Of a stretch of 64,000 nucleotides of DNA, positions 8,499-20,955 are shown piece after piece. The notes beneath the pieces are model-generated. The model had not been told where the DNA came from. It saw nothing but the letters and a program-made list of their open reading frames with translations, and searched no databases. The stretch comes from Polymyxa betae A26-41. Lineage: Eukaryota > Protista > Endomyxa: Phytomyxea. Location: NCBI GenBank assembly GCA_003693705.1, contig RBZT01000721.1:62001-126000 (forward strand), read 5' to 3'. The translations under genes were made by a program, and so were the position numbers. Every line of letters begins with the position of its first letter. Within the stretch, counting starts at the first letter, position 1.

Positions 8499-8653
8499 GT
8501 GCCTACCGGGGCACAGCAATTAGGGTGAAAGGGGTTTGGAGGAACTCCGGACACTTACTGATTCTCATCGCGATCAAATTCATCGTTCCAGACGTTATAT
8601 CGGGAGCGGCGCTGTTCTTCCATCGCCTCCTCCAGTTCTAATCGTCAATCGCA

Positions 8654-9179
8654 TCAACAAGAACCGCACGACGAGATTTCCAGGTGCGGATCAGTACTAC
8701 CTGGAGTCGGGGCCAGATTCTGGCGTTCGGCGCCGCCCACCACGTACGGCATCCGGCAGAAAACGCGTCGCACGCCCCGCGACTGATGATTGAGGAATTC
8801 ATGGTACGACTGCGCATCACGCAGGATGCCCTCGACCTGATCGTCGGGGACCTGTACGACCAATCGTCATCAGCAGCAGCGATCGAAGCCGTGACGGCCC
8901 CTGGATTCATACGTCGATGTTGTAGAGGCGTCTGCAGCAGATGCGGACCCATAACGCCATATAGTACGACTCCTGGGCGACGTTCCGGGCATTCCATCGG
9001 CGCCATCGCCGTCGTAACGAAACGATCAGGTTGCAAACGTTACCACGGGTCGGGACGCGGTCCGGCTGCGACTGGCCCAGACAGCCCAGAGCGGGGTCGC
9101 ATTGGCACGTGTCGGACACGATCAGGCAATCGAGCTCGGGGTCCGTTAAATGGACCGTGTCCAGACATCGGGTGGTCAT
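8654..9179 (-). CDS. Hypothetical protein, probably 2 exons
   Basis: GCC-ATG start; ORF 9179-8907 joins the 8863-8654 ORF in frame via a GTATGA..TACAG intron; no recognised family. Confidence 0.45.
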
Positions 9180-9224
9180 GGCGACTGATCGATCAAAGTC
9201 GGACTGCGAGTAGCGCGGACACCG

Positions 9225-9260
9225 CTGAGAACCCTAGACCCTAAAACCCTAGACCCTAAC
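9225..9260 (-). repeat. Interstitial telomere-like array GTTAGGG TCTAGGG TTTTAGGG TCTAGGG TTCTCAG; candidate 36-nt 5'UTR intron or telo-box
   Basis: Read directly: the + strand is ctgagaaccctagaccctaaaaccctagaccctaac. Confidence 0.85.
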
Positions 9261-9416
9261 TCCGGCCAAACTGCACTTTCCTTCAGCGAATTTCAGATCG
9301 CGTCACGTTATCGATCGCCGTCTGGATCTGGGTTTCGGTAGCTGTTGTCGCAGCGAGCGCCGCGATTTCGGAAAGGTTGAGGAGGGCGGGACGAGGCCGC
9401 GACGCAGTCCGTGGCC

Positions 9417-11561
9417 ATGTTTCAGATCGTGCGCCGGTCAAGGGCCAACATCACCAATCGGCTGTTCGCCACGATGGCATCTTCGGCTGAATCGGGTGCG
9501 ACTGACACCGGGGGCCGCTGCGCCTTGCGCATCCACCCGGTGAAACCGTTCTATAACGTCGCCCATCTGCAACGCATGGTACACGTTACCGTAACGTCAT
9601 CGTCGCCGACCGTCACCACTGACTTGCCGTCCAGATTCAGGAAGACGCCAAAGTTACCGATTTCATTGCCGTCTTCAAGGTTCGAATTACGCTCTCTCTT
9701 TGAGGAAGGCGTTCTGACCTCCTGTAACAGAAACCGAACCGTGACATCGGGTTCGTTTCCTTCGAATCGGAACAGGCCCGGGCGGATGCCCTGGTCAAGC
9801 TGCGTGAGCTACGTCGTCCCGGCTCGGATACACCCTACAGTCTGCAGGAGGTCGCCTTCATCACTGAGAGTAACACACAGAAACGTCAACGGGAGGCGAC
9901 CGTGGAACGTTCCCGGAAACGTCAACTGCGTAACACGGGCGATCCTGAACATCAGGAGACGATCGTCAAGACCGTGGCGGATGTCGTGACGCCGTGGCAT
10001 ACGGTCCCCTATCTGACCCAGCTCCAGCGGAAGATGGCCCAGCTACAGTCGGCCCTGACCTCGGTCATGCTGGCCCTGCGCAAGGACTATCGACACGAAG
10101 CGGCCCGGTATCCGGACCTGGACCTGAAAGGGGTCCCGCGTGAGGACGTTCCTCTTCACCTCCATGATCACGTTACGCTCGACGTCACGGACACGGCTGC
10201 GGCCCCGACCGAGGGCCGCGACCCGTTTCTGGCCTGCCCGATCGTGGGCGTGCACGGCTGGGCCACCGGTCGTCGCGGATACCGCAACAAGAACGACCTG
10301 ACGGTCGGGTACGACCAGGACGGCGCCGTCTGCGTCGGGTTCGTCGTCGGACGCCAACAGGGCCGTCTTGCGGTGGACGCCGCGGCCGACGCCCTGCCGT
10401 TGCCGCCCATCGCCGCACGGATCGCCTCCGACGCCCAAGCGCTGATGCGCGCGTCGTGCTGGACCCCGTTCGCGCAGCAGGGCCACGACGACGACGCGAC
10501 CGGCGTCTGGCGTCGTGTCCTGATTCGATCAGCTGGTACAACCGGACAGGTGATGGTGGCGATCGCTGCCGATCTGTCGCGGCTGTCGGCCGACGAGGTC
10601 GCCCTGCTCAAGGCGCAGCTGGCCACGGAGTTTCGCCCCGATCGATACGATGACGAAGAGATCGACGGACAGCGATGGCGTATCGAGACTGTCGTCATAC
10701 AGGTCACGACTTGTTTGGGAATTGTTCGCGCTCTGTGTACTGATTGTCGTTACATAGAATTTCGGCGGGTATGGTAACGTAATCCCCAGTGACATCCCGT
10801 ATGAATGCGTCACCGGTAACGGGTTCATCGTCGAGCACCTGGGCCGATTGGCGTTCCAGATTCAGCCCGGATCCTTCTTCCAGGTCCGCGAAACCCCATT
10901 TCGGGGTCCAGTACGCCCCTCCGGATTCCTGACCGATTGATTGTTCAGGTGAACACGCACGGTGCCCGTCTGCTGTATGATCTGGTCGGGGAATGGGCCG
11001 TGGCCGACCGCGACTGTGGTAACGTAATCGCGGCCGATGTCTGCTGCGGAACGGGGACGATCGGGATGACGTTACATGACCGCGTCCGGGAAGTGCTCGG
11101 CTTCGAGCTGGTCCCGTCCGCGGTCGATGATGCGCGTCTGAACGCTGAACGAAACGGCCTGGAGCGCTGCCAGTTCTTCGTGGGGAAGGCCGAGGTTTAG
11201 GGTTTTAGGGTTTGGCTAGGGTTTAGGGGTTCTTAGACTGCTCCAGGTTACGTTATCGCCGACCATCACCAAGCACATGTCCGGGATGGCATCCGATACG
11301 GAGCTCATCTGTATCGTAGATCCGCCCCGGCCCGGCCTGCACAAGTCCGTACTGAAAGCGATTCGGCAGTGCGAGCAGATCCGTCGCGTGGTTTACGTGT
11401 CATGTAATCCGAAATCCATGGCTGTTGATGTTACGGCCTTGATGAGGCCGCAGGGCGATAAACGCCCCGGACGTCCCTTCCGTCCTGTAAAGGCCACGCT
11501 GGTCGATATGTTTCCACATACAGATCATTGTGAGTCGATCGTGCTCCTAACGCGCGACTGA
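9417..11561 (+). CDS. TRM2: tRNA (uracil-54-C5)-methyltransferase (Trm2/TRMT2A-like)
   Basis: DVVTPWHTVPYLTQLQRK, GYRNKNDLTVG, GVWRRVLIRS, FQIQPGSFFQVNT, DVCCGTGTIG, IVDPPRPGLH, YVSCNP, DMFPHTDHCE. Confidence 0.93.
11195..11246 (+). repeat. 52-nt intron of TRM2 composed largely of telomeric repeats
   Basis: GTTTAGGGTTTTAGGGTTTGGCTAGGGTTTAGGGGTTCTTAGACTGCTCCAG; removal joins VGKAE to VTLSPTITKHMSG in frame with the DPPR exon. Confidence 0.88.
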
Positions 11562-11733
11562 ACTGTTAATGTTACGGTGATAACGTCATCCTCACATAAA
11601 CGTAACGTGATATGCGAAAGGAAAGCGCCGAACCTTCGCCAAAAAAAATTGTATCAGAATTAAACCGATTCAATTACGCTGATCTTACATTACAGTCTAT
11701 GATTCTTTATGTTACCGATTATGTTACGTTACG

Positions 11734-12815
11734 TTACTGTAGGTGGATGCGCAGGATCGGGTCCTGGATCGTCTGGTTGAGATCGGCAATGGCGGCGCCC
11801 ACCACTTTCGTTTCTAACGTAACAGACACGTTACAATCCAGGCCGTCCCGTTCGTGAGATAGAACTTACTGCAATGTCGCCACAGCAGTCCCAGGACGCG
11901 TGCGGCCCAGGTCGACCTCCTCACTCGGACCAGGTCGTACAGGACCGCGACCAGGTCCGGGTCGGCGGCCATGCGCGACTCGAACCTCGTCTCGATCGCC
12001 AGTCTAACAAACTCCCGGAACTGGCCCTGTTCGGCGTCCGCCATCAATCCGTGCACGACGCCGTCGTACTGGGCGTCGTTCAGGGCCTCGATCACCGTCA
12101 CCGTCCACTGCGCTGGCGGCGCTGGCGCCTTCTTCGGTGGTAACATGGCCAGTCGGTCACGGACCAGACGCCCCATCTCCGGACGTAACGTTGGACACCG
12201 CGCCAGGCACCGGACTGTCTCGTGGACAGTGGCGCTCGGCTCGATACTCACCGCTCGGCATAGTACCGTCAGCGGCGCCTGCGGCACGTGGTCGTGCTGG
12301 TCCGCGACGGCATCGACAGCGGCTGTGATCAGTTCTGGGGTTAGCAGGCGACGGAGAAGATCGGGTCGGATATCGAGCAGGAAGTGGAGACGATGGCGGC
12401 GGCGGGTCTCGTTAGCGATGAATGCGCCCAGACGATCGATGTTGTCGTCGTTCAATGAACAGCAGAGGCGTTGTAGGGCGTCGTCGGCGTCTTTGGGCGA
12501 TGGCGGTAGAATCGCGTTACCGATCAGAGAGCGAAGAGCGTCGTCCGGGTCGTGCTGGATTTCGGGCGTGGCGATGATGGTGGCGTCGGCGGACACCAGT
12601 TCGGCGGCTTTATCGGCGTCTTGGATATCGATACGGTATCCGTCCTGGGTATGTAACGAAATCCGACGAATCGATGCCAGGTCCGCATACAGGAGCTGCA
12701 GACGCGACAGGATACTGGCCCGCAGCTGCCCGACGTCGGCATCATCCGGGACCGCCAGCAAAAAACGACGCGGCTGCTGCTTTCCGCCGCCCCCAACATG
12801 GATCTGGAAACGCAT
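11734..12815 (-). CDS. Hypothetical protein with possible N-terminal ubiquitin-like fold and helical C-terminus
   Basis: 351-codon GC-rich ORF; MRFQIHV..RRFLLAVPDDADVGQLRASIL..ISLHTQDGYRID pattern; last intron GTAAGT..TTAG near 11815-11870. Confidence 0.6.
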
Positions 12816-13963
12816 TCTATCACTCACATCTCGCGTATGATCAGGGCCGGTACAGTTTCTGTAACTCAAATTTGAAACGTAAACTTAGTGTAAATTGAAG
12901 AGTCAAGATTGGTATCAGGAACAGGTGTATTAGGAATATGATTGATAAGACGATGATGTAGGCCAGCATTCTTATCGCCCTTCTAGATAGAGTTATGAAG
13001 GCCGATAATGGGTTGTTGGCCCAGATCGATCTACGCCTTCATACAACTGAATATGATAAGGAAGCGATCACCATACCAGCCAAGAATATAGGTAGGCGAT
13101 TATGTAACAAAACAGAGGAGGATATCTCATTACATGATGTACCTGCCAAAGACTGAGGGCTCGGTTCAGGAAATCGCCGAGCCCCGTGATGGTCCTCGGG
13201 GCAGAGTCAATATAGCCCCCGTGGTTGACTTAGTCGGTATCCTCGCTCGTTGAGCTCAACCCGTCGACCGTATTTGGGGGCATGTCACAGTATCCGATCC
13301 GGTAACGTAAACAGATGGATGCATCCGTTACCGGAGCGAATGCAGGAATGAGGCTGACGAGGGCGGCGGCGCCGCCTTTGTGGTTGATGGAGCTGCGGAC
13401 GGCGCAGTCCGTGCAATATATGACACAATGCCCTAACATATGCTGAGATCAAGGTCTTCATGTAAATTTTGAAAGAAAAGGGCAGCTTTTCTGATAGACG
13501 ACCGAGTTTTGCAATTTTATTGATAAAAATCATGAATTTTTATGCTGGGAATTTGGAAAAGTCAGTTTCATAACAAGTATTTGTCGCCGGCCAATCCGAA
13601 TCGCTAATGGATTGAACTCGCGCTTGCCCGACCAACCGGAGCTCAAGCCGATCATGAAGCTGGGCGGCGCGGCCTCCCCGGCTGGCTCGATAACGTTACG
13701 TTTTCTGGAGGCTGAGCCAGACCGAATGAGCCATCACTTCATAGAGCTTGACGTGGCCACCGATCCGACCGACTAATCACCCTGTGTTGAGTGTGGCGGC
13801 GCAGCCTGGCCCCATTCCATCCATCCTTCTTTTACATTTTTTGACTGGGTGATAACGTTACCCCTTGTATAGCTGTGGCTGTTCGCTGAGACACACTCCA
13901 CACGAGTCCATCTAGAAAGGCTCCTTTCATTTCCAAGTCCTTGTCGTCGTCGTCGTCTTGGCC

Positions 13964-16900
13964 ATGAGCCAAGGCGACTTGGACGAGAACGCTGCCGCCT
14001 TGGCTGATGTCTCCAAAAAGCTCGCCGATCTTCGCGAGCAGGTCCACGAGATGGTCTCGAAGCGGATGCCGGACGCGTCCAGGTTTAACGACATCCTGGA
14101 CCAGTATCTGATACAACTAGAGCTTATCAACCAGAAGAATTTGGACCCTAGCGATTTACTAAATGAGATCGGAACATTAGAGGAGGTCATTGAACGAATG
14201 ATGTTCAAAGCTAATACTCTAAAACCTGAAGAGAAAGAGATTCCTCATGATTCTAAGGTCCCTTGCTTTATGTCTTGGAAACCGCATGACTATACTTAGC
14301 TGCTGTACTTTAGATAAGTCCGGATACACTCAGCTTTCAGGTTATTGTTCACGTTCCAATCGCCATGAACGTCCAGGAGGTCACATTTGACCCTGTTCCG
14401 GCTTCCATGGATATTGGATACTTTCGGGAACAAATCGCCGATCTCATCGGTCTGGATCCGTTTTCTTTAGTCGTCAGATACAGGTGATATTAAATTCACA
14501 TGATACTCGATTGCGTTTCACTTTACTCATTGATGGTAGAGGGAATTTTTGTTTCCCCTCTGAAGATTCAATAACTTTAGGAATGCTGATCGGCGATGTT
14601 AACATGAGAAATGTTCAGCTGACGATTCTGACGGAAGCTGAAGCCGAAAAAATCGGCGTCATTCACGATTATAAGCAAGAGGTACAATCATCGTTTTCCA
14701 GTATTCCGTTGAATGACGCTGTGGCTCTAGAAAAAGAAGCATGAAATGCTAAGTCCTACAATCACTCCACCGCAATCTTTCAGAATGGCAAGCTGCATTT
14801 TATATTTCATTTTTCGTTTGAAGTAATGTCCTGTGTGCTGTAGTCAAATGGAAGGAAGCGGAGCAGTATACCTGAATACATGGTGAACAAAGAACAGGTT
14901 CACCAATACGTATTGGAACTCGAACGTGAGCAGCGTGAGCTGGAACAACTTAAAGACGATGCATCTGACTCTGACGATGGAATTAAGACGCCGCCTGAAA
15001 ATCAGATTGTCTCCGATTCTCGTCTCGAGACGAATGCGGAAGATCATTCTAGCAAGGCTCCTGTTGCTGAAATTGTTGCTGCTAAATTGCCAGAGGAGGA
15101 TCTGCCTCTACTTCCTCCGCCACCACCCCCTCCTTGTGGCGGTAATATTAAGCTCGTTTTTGTCTTTTCAAACGTTTGAAAGTTTTTAAGTGCCTCCTCC
15201 TCCACCACCACCGCCACCGCCTGGTCAGCCTTCTCTGGCTCTTGGTAAAAGGCTTCCGCCTGGTGCTGTTGAGTGCAGGAAATTACACTGGAAGACGCAC
15301 AGTATAATGTAAGGAAGCTTTCCTCAAAAGATCATCGTACTGACCTTTCATAAGGTTCGACTCTTCAATTTTTGCAGCGCTGCCCACAATATCTTTCATT
15401 CCGAGATCAGTGGTCGAAGAGAGCTGGGCAAATTCAGTCAACCGATCGGTTTTAGTTCGTAAAGACAGTAGAAGCTCTGTTGATTCCGATAAGAAACCGA
15501 AGACCAAATACGATCTGCCAGATATGAAGCAATCCGAGAATTTTGGAATCGTGTTGAAGAAGTAAGCTGATTCGCATCGATATGTTTATAGTTCAGTAAC
15601 CCTTTTTGTCCAGTTCGCCTCCAATCGATCAGCTGGCTTCAGGTAGCTCCCTTCTACCAAAGAATGCCAACGTTTTGAATGCTGTTGTTCTCAGCTTTGC
15701 AATCTCTTGACGAGACTGTTATTAGTGGGGAAGTTTTAGCGCGAATTTTCCAGGCTCTTCCTCGTAAAGACGATATTGATTTCGTTTCGAGCATTTCTGA
15801 AGAACTAAACCAAAGTAATGCAAGTACTGCCGTTTTATACGTCAAGGTCGAATTGTCGTTACGCTTTGATACTGGTGCTAATCCTGCGTGCTTGTAGGCT
15901 TTATCATCGATTCCATTCTGGGAAATTCGCCTCCGAGGATGGAAAACATTGCGGGAGTTTGACGAAAGAGCAACGATGTTGAAAGAGACGATCATGATTC
16001 TTTCTGAAGCAATGTCTTTCCTTCTCTCCAATGATTCTCTGAAATGGATGATCGCGGTTATTCTACAAGTCGGCAATGAAATGAATTTAAGCGCTGCCAG
16101 GGTTTTCAGAATTGATTTCCTATCGAAGCTAAGTTCATATAAATGGTATGATGTTTTCGTCGCACCTCCGTCTCGCTTCTTACCACCTGCATGGCAGCAT
16201 TGGACGTAACTCCAGCATGCTGGACTTCATCGTTAAGATCTTGGCAAAGCACGTCCCTCATGCGTTAGAGTTTCCGCAACAGGTAGCATCATAGGCTTGA
16301 GACGTTCGCCGTTCATAACGTTTTCTAAGTTGGGAGATCACTACCTGAAAGTATCCCGACGAACTTTACAGTCTGCATACAATGACGTCTCTGAATTGAA
16401 CACTCTTGTCGAGCAACAGTTCAAGTCTGTGTCTCGTGTGTCCAGCCAATTGCCACCAGACGATCCTTTTCTACGTATTTACAACAAATTTGAAGAAGCA
16501 GCACAACATTGTCGTGAGCTTCTCTCACTGTATCAGAATTTGGAAGCAACCGCGCTCAAAGTCCTTAATTATTTTGAGCTTAATGTTGATTCCGCGACTG
16601 CCATGTTCAGTGAGATGAATCCGATTCCAGAGTCACAAAGGAGGCGCCAGGAGCAATTACAGCGCGAATCTAACCGAGTTTGGGAGCTCTCCAAAGCTGA
16701 AGATGCCGCGTCTTCGTTTATCGCGGCCGTAAAAGCGCGATCGGCATTCCAGTTGGGTCAGGCTAGTATCGAAGAACGACAACAAGCCATGAATGCTGCT
16801 CGAAAGCACCTCAATGAGTGGATGTCTTTGATCGAGACGGATTGTGAGTTATCCAAATCCAGCTCTTCTTCTGACGTTTCAAACAATGAGAAACTCTCTG

Positions 16901-17166
16901 AAGCTATTCGTCATCTGTTCAGTTTCTTATGGGATTTCAGTGAGAAGTTCGCCAAATCAGTTAAAGTTCTAATCGAGCAGTCTTCTTCCAATAAGCCGTC
17001 ATCAGCAGTCAAAAGCAGGGAGAGGAAGAAAAGGACGATTTCTCATTTAAGAAATGATGGTATCTCAGATACGATGCTGCTTGAAAAAACCATTGATAAG
17101 GCTCTCGCAAGGAGGCGGCTGCCGTCTCCTGCCCGATCTGATGATTCAGTATCAAGTTTCATATGA
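13964..17166 (+). CDS. Formin (FH1 polyproline + divergent FH2), many introns
   Basis: PPPPPPPCG..PPPPPPPPPPG; RKLHWK; SENFGIVLKK; IPFWEIRLRGW; ILQVGNEMN..ARVFRIDFLSKLSSYK. Confidence 0.85.
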
Positions 17167-17464
17167 TGTATATCTACATATCGTTGATCGATTTATTCAA
17201 GCTACTTAAATATATCTATTTGTTAATTAAATATTCAATTGTTCCTTTGCTTTCATATTAATGGCTTGAAAACGTTCGCGGTCTTATAATCAATTTGTAT
17301 CCATGTTTACATTACATCTGTTGAGCACAATGTCATATATCTCTCGTTTATGTAGTTCAATGTTTGGAAATGGTTCCTGATCTTACGATCGCTCGATGTA
17401 CAGTTGCGTTTCATTGGTGAAAATAGATATCCGCTGTAATAGTCCTAATATTTAACCCCAGACA

Positions 17465-19726
17465 ATGAACGATTCGACACCATCATCAGATCGGGTCCTA
17501 AAGCTAGCACAACATCTCGAGAACAGACCAACAGCCGAATCATTGATTGAGCACAATATCCTCAAATGTAAGGCAGGAGAGTGCTCCGAGGTAGGTTTGT
17601 CCTGAATGTGTCCCTAGCATTCCGAGCAGATCCAGCACTTCATGAAGTAATGCAAGCCCTGATCCGTACTCGTCGAGAAAAAGAACTCGGCGCCCTGCTG
17701 AAGAAACGACGCTCGCTCCAGGATCTCATTGACCGCAATATCATGGTTGGAGGCCCGCCCGGTGCACCAGAAGTCTGCAAAGCGCGCCAGGCGCTCCTAA
17801 AGCATTTTCGCCGACACCAGCTCAACACATTTCTCGAGAAACGCCCAACGCTATCAGACGTCGCCAAGCGTAACGTTCTCGAAGGTAACGTAACGCCGGC
17901 CGCTCTGCCCAACGAATCGACACTCAGCGTGGCCATCAGACACGTTAATCTGGACTCGACTGGGACAACATGGGGTCCCGCCGTTGGCCCGTAACGGAGC
18001 GACGCTGACCTGTATCGACGATACGCTGTTCCTAATCGGCGGGTTCTGTGCCGAGGGCCGCCACTCCACCTACGATATCATGTGCTACAATGTGGCCTCG
18101 GAATCATGGACGCGGCCCATTTGTGCTGGTACGCCGGCGTCCCCGTCGTCGCGGCCATACCTGACCGTAAGATAGGCGCTCTGCCTTCAGATCGGTTCGC
18201 CCATAGCTGTTCCGTGGTCGGAAAGCAGCTGGTCCTATTCGGTGGGTGCAGCCCCGATGGGGTCTGGCTGAACGATGTTCATGTCCTTGATACCGAACAC
18301 GAACAAGCCTTACTCCCGAAACTCGACGTATTACGCAACCGATCCGATGCAGCATCCCACTGATGATCCGGATTCAGGGAACGAAACACAGCTGGAAGAA
18401 GAAGCTGCCGCCTCAGACCATGCTGTTATGGTATGCGCCAGAGGCAACCGGCGCACAGCCATGTCCCAGAGCAGCACATTCAGCCACGGTTGTTGGCACA
18501 CGAGTATACGTCTTCGGTGGCAACGACGGTACACGACTGTAAGTGCCCATTCGATGAGGGCCGGCACGACGCGGCTTTTCACACCTGATCATCAGATTCA
18601 ACGACCTGCACATTCTCGAGGTCGAGACCATGGGCTGGTCGAAGCCGAAAGTTCGGGGGATGCCGCCCTCACCCCGTGCCGGTCATGGGGCCGCCCTTGT
18701 CGGCGACCACGAGCTGTATATCTTCGGGGGCGGTACGGCCCAGGGACCCAGCAACTCGCTGCACATCCTCGACCTGGAGACGCTGACCTGGTCGGAACCC
18801 ACCGTCTTGGGGACGCCGCCTAGCCCACGTGTTGGCCACAGTCTGCATGTACGAGCCTGCGATTTCGTTTCTCGATCACGTTACGATGGCGTTTCGTTGA
18901 GCTGACACGCCGACGCAGGTGCTAATGGGCCCCAGCCCGATGCTGTTGGTGTTCGCTGGCGGTACGATGGAGAAGCTGTACGACGATCTGCATGTGTTCG
19001 GCTGCCAGACGCGACAATGGTCCCGGCCCAGTGATACTGGCTCGGGTTAGGGTTTTAGGGTTTCGGGACTTGGTTGTGTTCTCAACGACGCTTGCAGTTC
19101 CGGTAGCACGCACGGGCCATTCTAGTTGTCTGGTTCGCGACCAGCAATCGAATCGCGAATCCATCTACTTCTTCGGTGGTGCTGGTCCACAGGGACAGCT
19201 CTATAACGACCTGTATCTGCTGGATTGCGATTTCATTAGCGTCGCTTCGTAAGAGCATTGGCATAGGTTCAGCTCAATGCTTGAGAGAATATTGCAGATT
19301 GTCGGAGATTGGGTCCGATGGCGATCTAATCAAAGACAAACTCTCGCCCTCTGCAAGCTCAGTCTTAGATGGTGATAAATACCAACATGGTCCATTATGG
19401 GCCGAGAAGGTCAGTTGGGTGCGTGAATACACAATCTCCGATCTGATCGAAATGGAAAGGTGAATATGACAAGGGAGCGGATTAACGGCCTAATGACGGA
19501 CGTCAAGAAGAAAATCGATTTGGCGCAAGAGGATGCTTTGCAGAAGGAGAAGCAACTGGTTGGGTCCATCGAGGTAATATTTACTATAGTGACGGTGTAT
19601 GTAAAGTTAAGTGGCTGCCTGCAGAGATCTTTCACGGAGCTGCGAGCCGAGGTCGACGCCCTGACGGTGTTTGTTCGCACTGAGCTTGACAATCTACTGG
19701 GCCAACAACATCAGGAGCTTTTTTGA
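17465..19726 (+). CDS. RPEL-repeat + Kelch beta-propeller + C-terminal coiled-coil protein
   Basis: LAQHLENRPTAESLIEHNIL, LKKRRSLQDLIDRNIM and FLEKRPTLSDVAKRNVL (RPEL-like); PSDRFAHSCSVVGKQLVLFGG, PSPRAGHGAALVGDHELYIFGG and ARTGHS..IYFFGG (Kelch). Confidence 0.85.
19046..19097 (+). repeat. 52-nt intron of the RPEL-Kelch gene starting with telomeric repeats
   Basis: GTTAGGGTTTTAGGGTTTCGGG...CTTGCAG; removal restores the Kelch blade WSRPSDTGS-VPVARTGHS. Confidence 0.88.
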
Positions 19727-19953: not shown

Positions 19954-20955
19954 ATGCCGGGCCCGCATGCCGGCGACCAGGACGAGCCCATGCTGCAGGA
20001 CAACCCGAATCGTTTCGTCATCTATCCGGTCCAGCACGCCGAGATCTGGGCCATGTACAAGAAACACGTCGCATCGTTCTGGACGCCGGCCGAGATCGAT
20101 CTTTCGGGGGACGCCGACGACTGGGCCCAGCTGACGGGCGGCGAGCGCCATTTCGTCCAGAACGTGTTGGCGTTCTTCGCGGCCAGCGACGGCATCGTCC
20201 TGGAGAATCTAGCAGCCCGCTTTCTGAACGACGTTCAATGGCCGGAGGCGCGCTGCTTCTACGGGTTCCAGGTCGCCATGGAGAACATGCATTCGGAGAC
20301 GTACGCGCTCTTGATCGACACTTACGTTCGCGACCCGGTACAGAAAGACGCCCTGTTTCGGGCGATCGACACAATCCCGTGCGTGAAGCGCAAAGCCGAA
20401 TGGGCCCTGAAATGGATCAGCTCAGAGTGCTCGTTCGCGACCCGATTGGTGGCGTTCGCCGCCGTCGAAGGCGTGTTCTTCAGCGGGTCGTTCTGTGCGA
20501 TTTTCTGGCTGAAGAAGCGCGGCCTAATGCAAGGGCTTTGCTTCAGCAACGAACTGATTTCACGCGACGAGGGCCTGCATACCGATTTCGCTTGTCTTCT
20601 GCATTCGATGTTAAAGCATCGGCTGGATAGCGAGACGATCACGAATATTATTACAGAGGGCGTCAAAATAGAGAAAGAATTCGTGTGCGAATCGCTCCCA
20701 GTCGATCTGATCGGCATGAACTCGAAGCTGATGTCGCAATATATCGAATATGTCGCTGATCGACTCTTAACGTCGCTGAATGTCGAGAGACATTTTAAGG
20801 CCGAGAATCCGTTTGAATGGATGGATATGATTTCGCTGCCGGGAAAGACGAACTTCTTCGAGAAACGGGTAAGTGATTATCAGAGGGCCGGCGTCATGGC
20901 CAGCATGATGAATGGATCGACCAGACCTCGGTTCGTCCTGGACGAGGACTTTTGA
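19954..20955 (+). CDS. RNR2: Ribonucleotide reductase small subunit (R2), intronless
   Basis: [90 protein letters not shown]. Confidence 0.97.

What the first reader, a model, noticed from the sequence alone, without database searches (positions are those of the whole stretch)
11195..11246. Spliceosomal intron built from telomeric repeats (TRM2): candidate telomere-repeat intron class
Seen: the 52-nt intron reads GTTTAGGG-TTTTAGGG-TTTGGCTAGGG-TTTAGGGG-TTCTTAGACTGCTCCAG. Its donor GT is part of the repeat, and splicing is required to join GKAE to the catalytic DPPR/SCNP exon. The same GTT(T)AGGGTTTTAGGG-type head recurs at 19046 and, with TCTAGGG variants, at 9260(-). Each is G-strand-sense, in unrelated genes, within GC-rich islands. 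Known: TTTTAGGG/TTTAGGG are telomere repeats (TTTTAGGG is recalled for Plasmodiophora and Chlamydomonas), and telomerase can add repeats at double-strand breaks. Inference: either (a) intron gain or remodelling through telomeric-repeat insertion at breaks, tolerated because GTTAGG is a usable donor and TAG/CAG provides acceptors, or (b) a selected telo-box/G-quadruplex element at 5' splice sites read by a telomere-repeat-binding protein. The four G-runs could fold an RNA G4 that masks the donor.
Basis: partly seen in the sequence, partly recalled or inferred. Interest (0 to 1): 0.88.

Follow-up and report, generated by a model that had tools for sequence, protein, structure and literature searches.

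The report
Telomere-like DNA tags inside tiny introns
In the sugar-beet root parasite Polymyxa betae, about a thousand short runs of two to four telomere-like repeats lie in introns, in front of genes and in repeats, on either strand; they look more like docking sites for a telomere-type DNA-binding protein than like a new class of intron.

Summary
In detail: 11195-11246 is a 52-nt GT-AG intron needed for the TRM2 reading frame, and its first 35 nt are four telomere-like units. The genome matches Polymyxa betae. Two-unit runs are 21-fold enriched genome-wide (1439 vs 68); single units only 1.4-fold.

The 'telomere-headed intron class' is not supported as a class. Of 40 runs inspected, 12 are G-strand-sense intronic (5 at the donor), 7 are C-strand-sense intronic, 14 lie outside introns and 7 are unclear. 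Intron length is the genome median. The likely telomere (contig-start arrays) is a T2AG3/T3AG3 mix, not T4AG3. In adenylate kinase 7 a motif-bearing intron is shared with Plasmodiophora, where it has no motif, so at least some runs entered old introns. Most runs have only two G-tracts, so a G-quadruplex cannot be general.

Best reading: a tandem telo-box (consensus YTAGGGTTT) read on DNA by a TRF-type Myb protein, with weak donor rules letting it overlap splice sites. No RNA check was possible. The scan noted the same motif in many other introns of this genome.

The parts
11195..11246 (+). 52-nt U2-type GT-AG intron, last intron of the TRM2/TrmA-like tRNA m5U methyltransferase gene, phase 0
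   Evidence: length equals the median of 409 predicted introns
11195..11229 (+). four telomere-like units (G-tracts separated by 5, 8 and 4 nt); the first unit supplies the donor GT
10949..11194 (+). upstream exon with SAM-binding motif DVCCGTG, ending GKAE
   Evidence: family assigned from motifs by established knowledge, not searched
11247..11561 (+). last exon with DPPR, YVSCNP and DMFPHT motifs and the stop codon
9417..11561 (+). whole predicted TRM2-like gene (6 exons, about 620 aa, GC3 0.74); 5' exons uncertain
19046..19097 (+). second 52-nt intron with a two-unit run at the donor, in an RPEL+Kelch gene
9230..9260 (-). four-unit run with TCTAG3 variants in the divergent gap between a DTW-like gene (ATG 9179, minus strand) and TRM2; promoter/5' UTR, intron status unproven
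8503..8558 (-). intron of the neighbouring DTW-like gene carrying a degenerate motif in the opposite (C-strand-sense) orientation behind a canonical GTAAGT donor

Best explanation
The run is one of about 1,100 short tandem telo-boxes (2-4 units, consensus Y-T-AGGG-T-T-T, linkers of 2-4 T or TCT) in non-coding DNA of P. betae. It is most likely read as double-stranded DNA by a TRF/telobox-type Myb protein that wants two half-sites, to set transcription or chromatin state over GC-rich gene regions (inferred). The genome is compact, so its 50-nt introns are a main place where such sites fit (shown). Splicing only filters placement (inferred): donors here are very degenerate (+3 is T in a third), so a unit preceded by G gives a usable GT-N-AG donor and a GTRAG donor is a few substitutions from a unit; internal TAGs are harmless when too close to the donor to act as acceptors; C-strand copies carry neither GT nor AG and sit mid-intron. 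Origin by telomerase priming or by point mutation plus slippage is not resolved.
For: Tandem dimers enriched 21x but single units 1.4x. Both orientations in introns plus many non-intronic runs: 12 G-sense, 7 C-sense, 14 non-intronic of 40; C-sense introns split Tubulin_C and a kinase gene. Behind GTAAG donors 113 G-sense vs 94 C-sense hits over a background of about 77 each. The outer unit has C at the Y position in 12 of 30 and never A, while the T after the G-tract pair is 96% fixed, which fits the YTAGGGTT half-site; TRF1 dimers bind two YTAGGGTTR motifs regardless of spacing or orientation (PMC3241663); the S. pombe HisBox is two units bound by Teb1 (PMC4839565). Interstitial linkers include 18% T4 and some TCT, nearly absent from the long terminal arrays. 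Motif present in an intron shared with P. brassicae that lacks it there. A second DNA word, GTAACG, behaves the same way and also builds splice sites.
Against: No binding or chromatin data. A TRFH domain was not found (no positive control), and telobox-Myb genes in this genome are known only from unchecked scan notes. A roughly 2:1 G-sense excess in introns and a donor excess (4 of 10 at offset 3 or less; AG|GT 70 vs AC|GT 30, but only 32 vs 19 once AAG is dropped, p=0.09) leave room for an RNA-level role. C at the Y position could be transition bias (p=0.1 under a 4:1:1 model). The half-site ends in T, not R. The sample is 137 kb, partly selected, with ab initio gene models.
Confidence: 0.55

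Rival explanations
1. Functionless scars: telomerase adds one to a few units at breaks or free 3' ends in open, GC-rich chromatin; the units survive only where they do not break a reading frame and then drift by slippage.
For: Units match the T2/T3 mix of the contig-start arrays; TERT is present; orientation is close to random; this is the model proposed for plant telo-box spread (PMC3022908); none seen in 40 kb of P. brassicae, including the orthologous AK7 gene.
Against: G-tracts and the following TT stay nearly invariant while the Y position varies; runs cap at 2-4 units; T4 and TCT linkers are common inside but not at ends; motif introns are not longer than others (52 vs 51 nt), so the run replaces sequence rather than adding to it. 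The P. brassicae blank is weak (about 2 expected).
Confidence: 0.22
2. RNA-level splicing element: UAGGG/G-runs near the donor are read by an hnRNP A1/H-like protein, or fold a G-quadruplex, and tune use of weak 5' splice sites.
For: G-sense copies are about twice as common in introns (37 vs 15 units); mild donor excess; UAGGG is a known hnRNP A1 site in animals (own knowledge; reviews listed, not read).
Against: A third of intronic runs are C-sense and a third of all runs are outside introns; the strand difference is not significant (p=0.2-0.7; the acceptor test has low power); 20 of 36 runs have two G-tracts and 4 have four; the TRM2 run misses the strict G4 pattern (8-nt loop) and ViennaRNA with G4 enabled prefers a hairpin.
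Confidence: 0.13
3. Intron gain: telomerase-made insertions in exons became new introns because the unit supplies a donor and TAG/CAG supplies an acceptor.
For: Donor-coincident cases exist (TRM2, Kelch, two in a WD40 gene, C50). Two motif-bearing AK7 introns are at positions absent from P. brassicae, and one is flanked by a 7-bp direct repeat.
Against: Two motif-free AK7 introns are also P. betae-only, so intron turnover is high regardless of the motif; the one shared intron carries the motif; the 3' halves of motif introns are unrelated, ordinary sequence; the run is 13-35 nt, less than a viable intron (5th percentile 39 nt); many motif introns have canonical GTAAG/GTGAG donors.
Confidence: 0.1

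Closest known systems
Plant telo-box (AAACCCTA; Arabidopsis, rice; PMC3022908) and its TRB Myb readers, which recruit PRC2/JMJ14 (PMC11287191)
   Same: Short interstitial copy of the organism's telomere unit; the 8-mer core is the same; found upstream of start codons; depleted in coding sequence.
   Different: Here the signal is tandem 2-4 units, not single units; introns anywhere in the gene are the densest compartment (in Arabidopsis intron density equals the genome mean and favours the first two introns); runs overlap splice sites; Rhizaria, no reader shown.
Fission-yeast HisBox/Teb1, budding-yeast Tbf1 sites, and the TRF1 dimer site (two YTAGGGTTR half-sites)
   Same: Two adjacent telomere-type half-sites, Y tolerated at the first position, variable spacing, used away from telomeres.
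   Different: Those are promoter or telomere elements at few loci; here about 1,100 runs, half or more inside gene bodies; the half-site ends in T.
Short interstitial telomeric sequences made by telomerase at repaired breaks
   Same: Telomere-like units inside chromosomes, either orientation, TERT present.
   Different: Much shorter, far more numerous, degenerate in a patterned way; no empty orthologous site shown.
Intronic G-runs / UAGGG splicing elements; introner-type intron gain
   Same: G-tracts near donors of small introns; high intron turnover in this lineage.
   Different: Not strand-restricted; introns share only the short run, not their whole length.

Membership tests
U2 spliceosomal intron | GT-AG ends, typical length, removal restores a conserved frame | tested here: met
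   (the only other in-frame acceptor would give a 25-nt intron, below the genome's range)
U2 spliceosomal intron | junction seen in RNA | not testable with these tools
Plant-type telo-box | unit equals the organism's telomere unit | tested here: met
   long arrays at the starts of C97, C649, C665, C871, G-strand outward, are a T2AG3/T3AG3 mix; telomeric nature inferred from position; no triple T4AG3
Plant-type telo-box | concentrated in 5' UTR/promoter rather than introns | tested here: not met
   units per kb of strand: intron sense 1.44, intron antisense 0.59, intergenic 0.64, CDS under 0.1 (selected sample)
Plant-type telo-box | single unit over-represented | tested here: inconclusive
   6010 vs 4388; the excess is explained by tandem runs
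Plant-type telo-box | bound by a telobox Myb protein; acts with a partner element | not testable with these tools
   PF08558 blank without control; GTAACG co-occurrence weak (rho 0.19)
TRF/Teb1-type dimer site | two half-sites starting YTAGGGTT with flexible spacing | tested here: met
   matrix; linkers T3 44, T2 30, T4 18, other 8 in the first 100 hits
TRF/Teb1-type dimer site | purine after the half-site (YTAGGGTTR) | tested here: not met
   T in 69 of 92 units
Telomerase-inserted short ITS | insertion relative to an empty orthologous site, exact telomere copies | tested here: inconclusive
   P. brassicae introns too diverged to align; interstitial linkers differ from terminal arrays
Intron gain by repeat insertion | motif introns lie at new positions | tested here: inconclusive
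   AK7: one motif intron shared, two P. betae-only, as are two motif-free ones; donor-coincident introns not tested (blank)
Intron gain by repeat insertion | motif fixed at the 5' end in G-sense orientation | tested here: not met
   5 of 19 intronic runs
RNA G-quadruplex element | four G3 tracts with loops of 1-7 nt on the transcribed strand | tested here: not met
   TRM2 run passes only the relaxed 1-12 pattern; 4 of 36 runs have four units

The most novel reading that the evidence does not exclude
A subset of P. betae introns (the donor-coincident ones, roughly estimated at a few hundred) arose or had their donors rebuilt by telomerase-templated DNA, and the same runs now serve as gene-body landing sites for telobox-Myb proteins. 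This would tie telomerase to intron gain and to gene-body chromatin marking in one genome.
Probability: 0.12. Interest if true: 0.85.

Novelty: new variant of a known kind. Interest (0 to 1): 0.5.

Why it matters
Telomere-like cis-elements are known from plant and yeast promoters. I found no paper describing them in Rhizaria or concentrated in tiny internal introns (searchable library only). About 1% of introns carry them, and unchecked scan notes say some genes have them in many introns. The genome therefore offers hundreds of replicates to test the old proposal that telomerase seeds telo-boxes in open chromatin, and to ask whether DNA-binding sites can shape splice sites. It also gives a first candidate for the Polymyxa telomere unit (T2-3AG3), different from Plasmodiophora's. 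The specific claim of a new intron class is the weakest part.

Tried and rejected
So TRM2 itself was not searched against Pfam or homologues.

T4AG3 as telomere: no triple copy. The acceptor-side orientation test (140 vs 133) sits at background level and has low power. The RNR2 search found no plasmodiophorid genomic contig. The C50 exon search was blank. The metagenome scan gave only a 29% relative. Distant AK7 outgroups have introns 4 nt and 4 codons away from the P. betae sites: not identical, so uninformative. The TRFH search was blank without a control. My first by-eye reading of L005 as a G-sense intron was wrong; it is a C-sense intron on the other strand.

Full report
Source. The window is C648:62001-126000 of a 27,085,814-base, 1001-contig assembly. 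This matches the Polymyxa betae draft (1,001 contigs, 27,085,946 bp, 45% GC; PMC6328671); the identification is an inference from those numbers.

Observation. The 52-nt stretch 11195-11246 reads as described. The unspliced frame stops after GKAE; removing the stretch joins it to an exon with DPPR, YVSCNP and DMFPHT, motifs of TRM2/TrmA methyltransferases by established knowledge. I wrote a self-training gene finder for the window plus 40 loci (137 kb). It predicts 409 introns, median 52 nt, quartiles 47-58, with very loose donors (+3: A 44%, T 33%), and recovers this intron and the one at 19046-19097, also when blind to intron content. The intron's length is thus ordinary. The run at 9230-9260 lies in a 237-bp divergent gap, upstream of an ATG, and needs no intron. 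No RNA evidence could be obtained.

More than chance. Single hexamers are not enriched in the window (21 vs 16.9) and the 7-mer only 1.4-fold in the genome. Two adjacent units occur 1439 times against 68 for the reversed control, about 1,100 separate runs by my estimate. The feature is the tandem run.

Where the runs lie. Of 40 multi-unit runs inspected, 12 are in introns with the G-strand in sense; five of these start at the donor, the rest lie 6-30 nt in, several behind canonical GTAAG or GTGAG donors (for example in a PCMT gene). Seven are in introns with the C-strand in sense, among them introns that split Tubulin_C and a GRK kinase and the long AK7 intron fixed by homology. Fourteen are outside introns: just upstream of start codons, between genes, or in a dispersed repeat beside retrotransposon integrase ORFs. 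Seven are unclear. Genome-wide, a GTAAG donor word is followed by the G-sense unit 113 times and by the C-sense unit 94 times, over a background near 77 each. The acceptor-side test gave 140 vs 133 and has little power. AG before a GT-starting unit outnumbers AC 70 to 30, or 32 to 19 without AAG, which can be a degenerate unit. So there may be a roughly twofold G-sense bias and a modest donor excess, neither established. In the window 2 of 205 predicted introns carry a run.

Telomere unit. There is no triple T4AG3 in the assembly, although that is the P. brassicae unit (PMC6823432). Arrays of four or more units are rare (28 hits); the longest lie at contig starts with the G-strand running outward and mix T2AG3 and T3AG3. 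I take this as the likely telomere; C649 has about 90 non-repeat bases beyond its array, so this is not certain. A TERT RNA-binding domain is present. Interstitial linkers are T3 44, T2 30, T4 18, other 8 per 100, so they are not fresh copies. The unit matrix is Y-T-AGGG-T-T-T, with C at Y in 12 of 30 outer units. TRF1 dimers bind two YTAGGGTTR motifs at free spacing and orientation, and the two-unit HisBox binds Teb1.

Age of the introns. AK7 was the one gene testable against P. brassicae. P. betae has five introns; P. brassicae three; only one position (residue 587, phase 0) is shared. In P. betae that intron carries a three-unit run at +6; in P. brassicae it has none. Two other motif introns and two motif-free introns are P. 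betae-only. So the motif can enter (or leave) an old intron, and new positions are not special to it. No two-unit run was found in 40.5 kb of P. brassicae, where about two would be expected at the P. betae rate: suggestive only. No donor-coincident intron could be tested.

G-quadruplex. The TRM2 run has four tracts but an 8-nt loop; ViennaRNA with G4 enabled folds a hairpin instead. Twenty of 36 runs have two units and four have four.

Mechanism. Shown: tandem telomere-like runs in all non-coding compartments, both strands, GC-rich surroundings, ordinary introns. Inferred: they are double-stranded binding sites for a TRF/telobox Myb protein (0.55). Splice rules then decide where they fit: loose donors accept a unit, internal TAGs near the donor are too close to act as acceptors, and C-sense copies carry no GT or AG. 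A second word, GTAACG, saturates the same region on both strands and likewise forms donors and acceptors, which suggests that DNA motifs shaping splice sites is a general trait of this genome. Rivals: neutral telomerase scars (0.22), an RNA element (0.13), intron gain (0.10). These are not exclusive; telomerase could seed what a protein later keeps.

Comparison. It works like a plant telo-box or yeast Teb1/Tbf1 site, but fails the telo-box placement test: in Arabidopsis the box is 5'-UTR-enriched and at genome average in introns, whereas here introns are the densest compartment and the runs are tandem. I found no paper on this in plasmodiophorids. Other first readers of this scan noted the same motif in many introns, in both orientations, and several telobox-like Myb genes; these are unchecked notes, not support.

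Limits.

Verdict. Real and genome-wide, a new variant of a known kind of element; not shown to be an intron class. Interest 0.5.

Noticed in passing
window 9000-14000; also C7, C17, C19 loci: GTAACG/CGTTAC is the most over-represented 7-mer family of the window (28 vs 4.8 expected), on both strands, in exons and introns, and forms many donors (GTAAC) and acceptors (GTTACAG).
   Followed up: partly
L006, L007, L008, L009 (around locus position 1500, 1500, 1071 and 1519): A two- or three-unit run sits about 90-110 nt after a TATA-like box in a dispersed repeat family; in L006, L007 and L009 it lies next to retrotransposon integrase ORFs, so possibly an LTR promoter. Observed only.
   Followed up: no
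G000 C97:8-62, C649:94-319, C665:134-169, C871:198-221: Long mixed T2AG3/T3AG3 arrays at contig starts: candidate P. betae telomere, different from P. brassicae T4AG3.
   Followed up: partly
G000 C940:36930-37375 (-): Telomerase RNA-binding domain (PF12009) in two exons.
   Followed up: no
C19:35274-35328 (L040): AK7 motif intron is flanked by a 7-bp direct repeat and lies 4 nt from an intron site shared by Paratrimastix and an AT-rich eukaryote: possible sliding or new gain beside an old site.
   Followed up: partly
C19 AK7 vs L044: Only 1 of 5 P. betae and 1 of 3 P. brassicae intron positions are shared, and neighbours differ: fast intron turnover and little synteny between the two genera.
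   Followed up: partly
window 13964-17150 and 17462-19726: Formin FH2-like gene followed by an RPEL-repeat plus Kelch gene; GC content switches within the second.
   Followed up: no
window 19954-20955: Intronless ribonucleotide reductase small subunit (70% to Spongospora) in an otherwise intron-rich region.
   Followed up: partly
C19:32349-33852 (L037): Divergent alpha-tubulin-like gene with two C-sense motif introns, next to AK7; several motif-rich genes look flagellar (AK7, WD40/EF-hand, tubulin), not tested.
   Followed up: no
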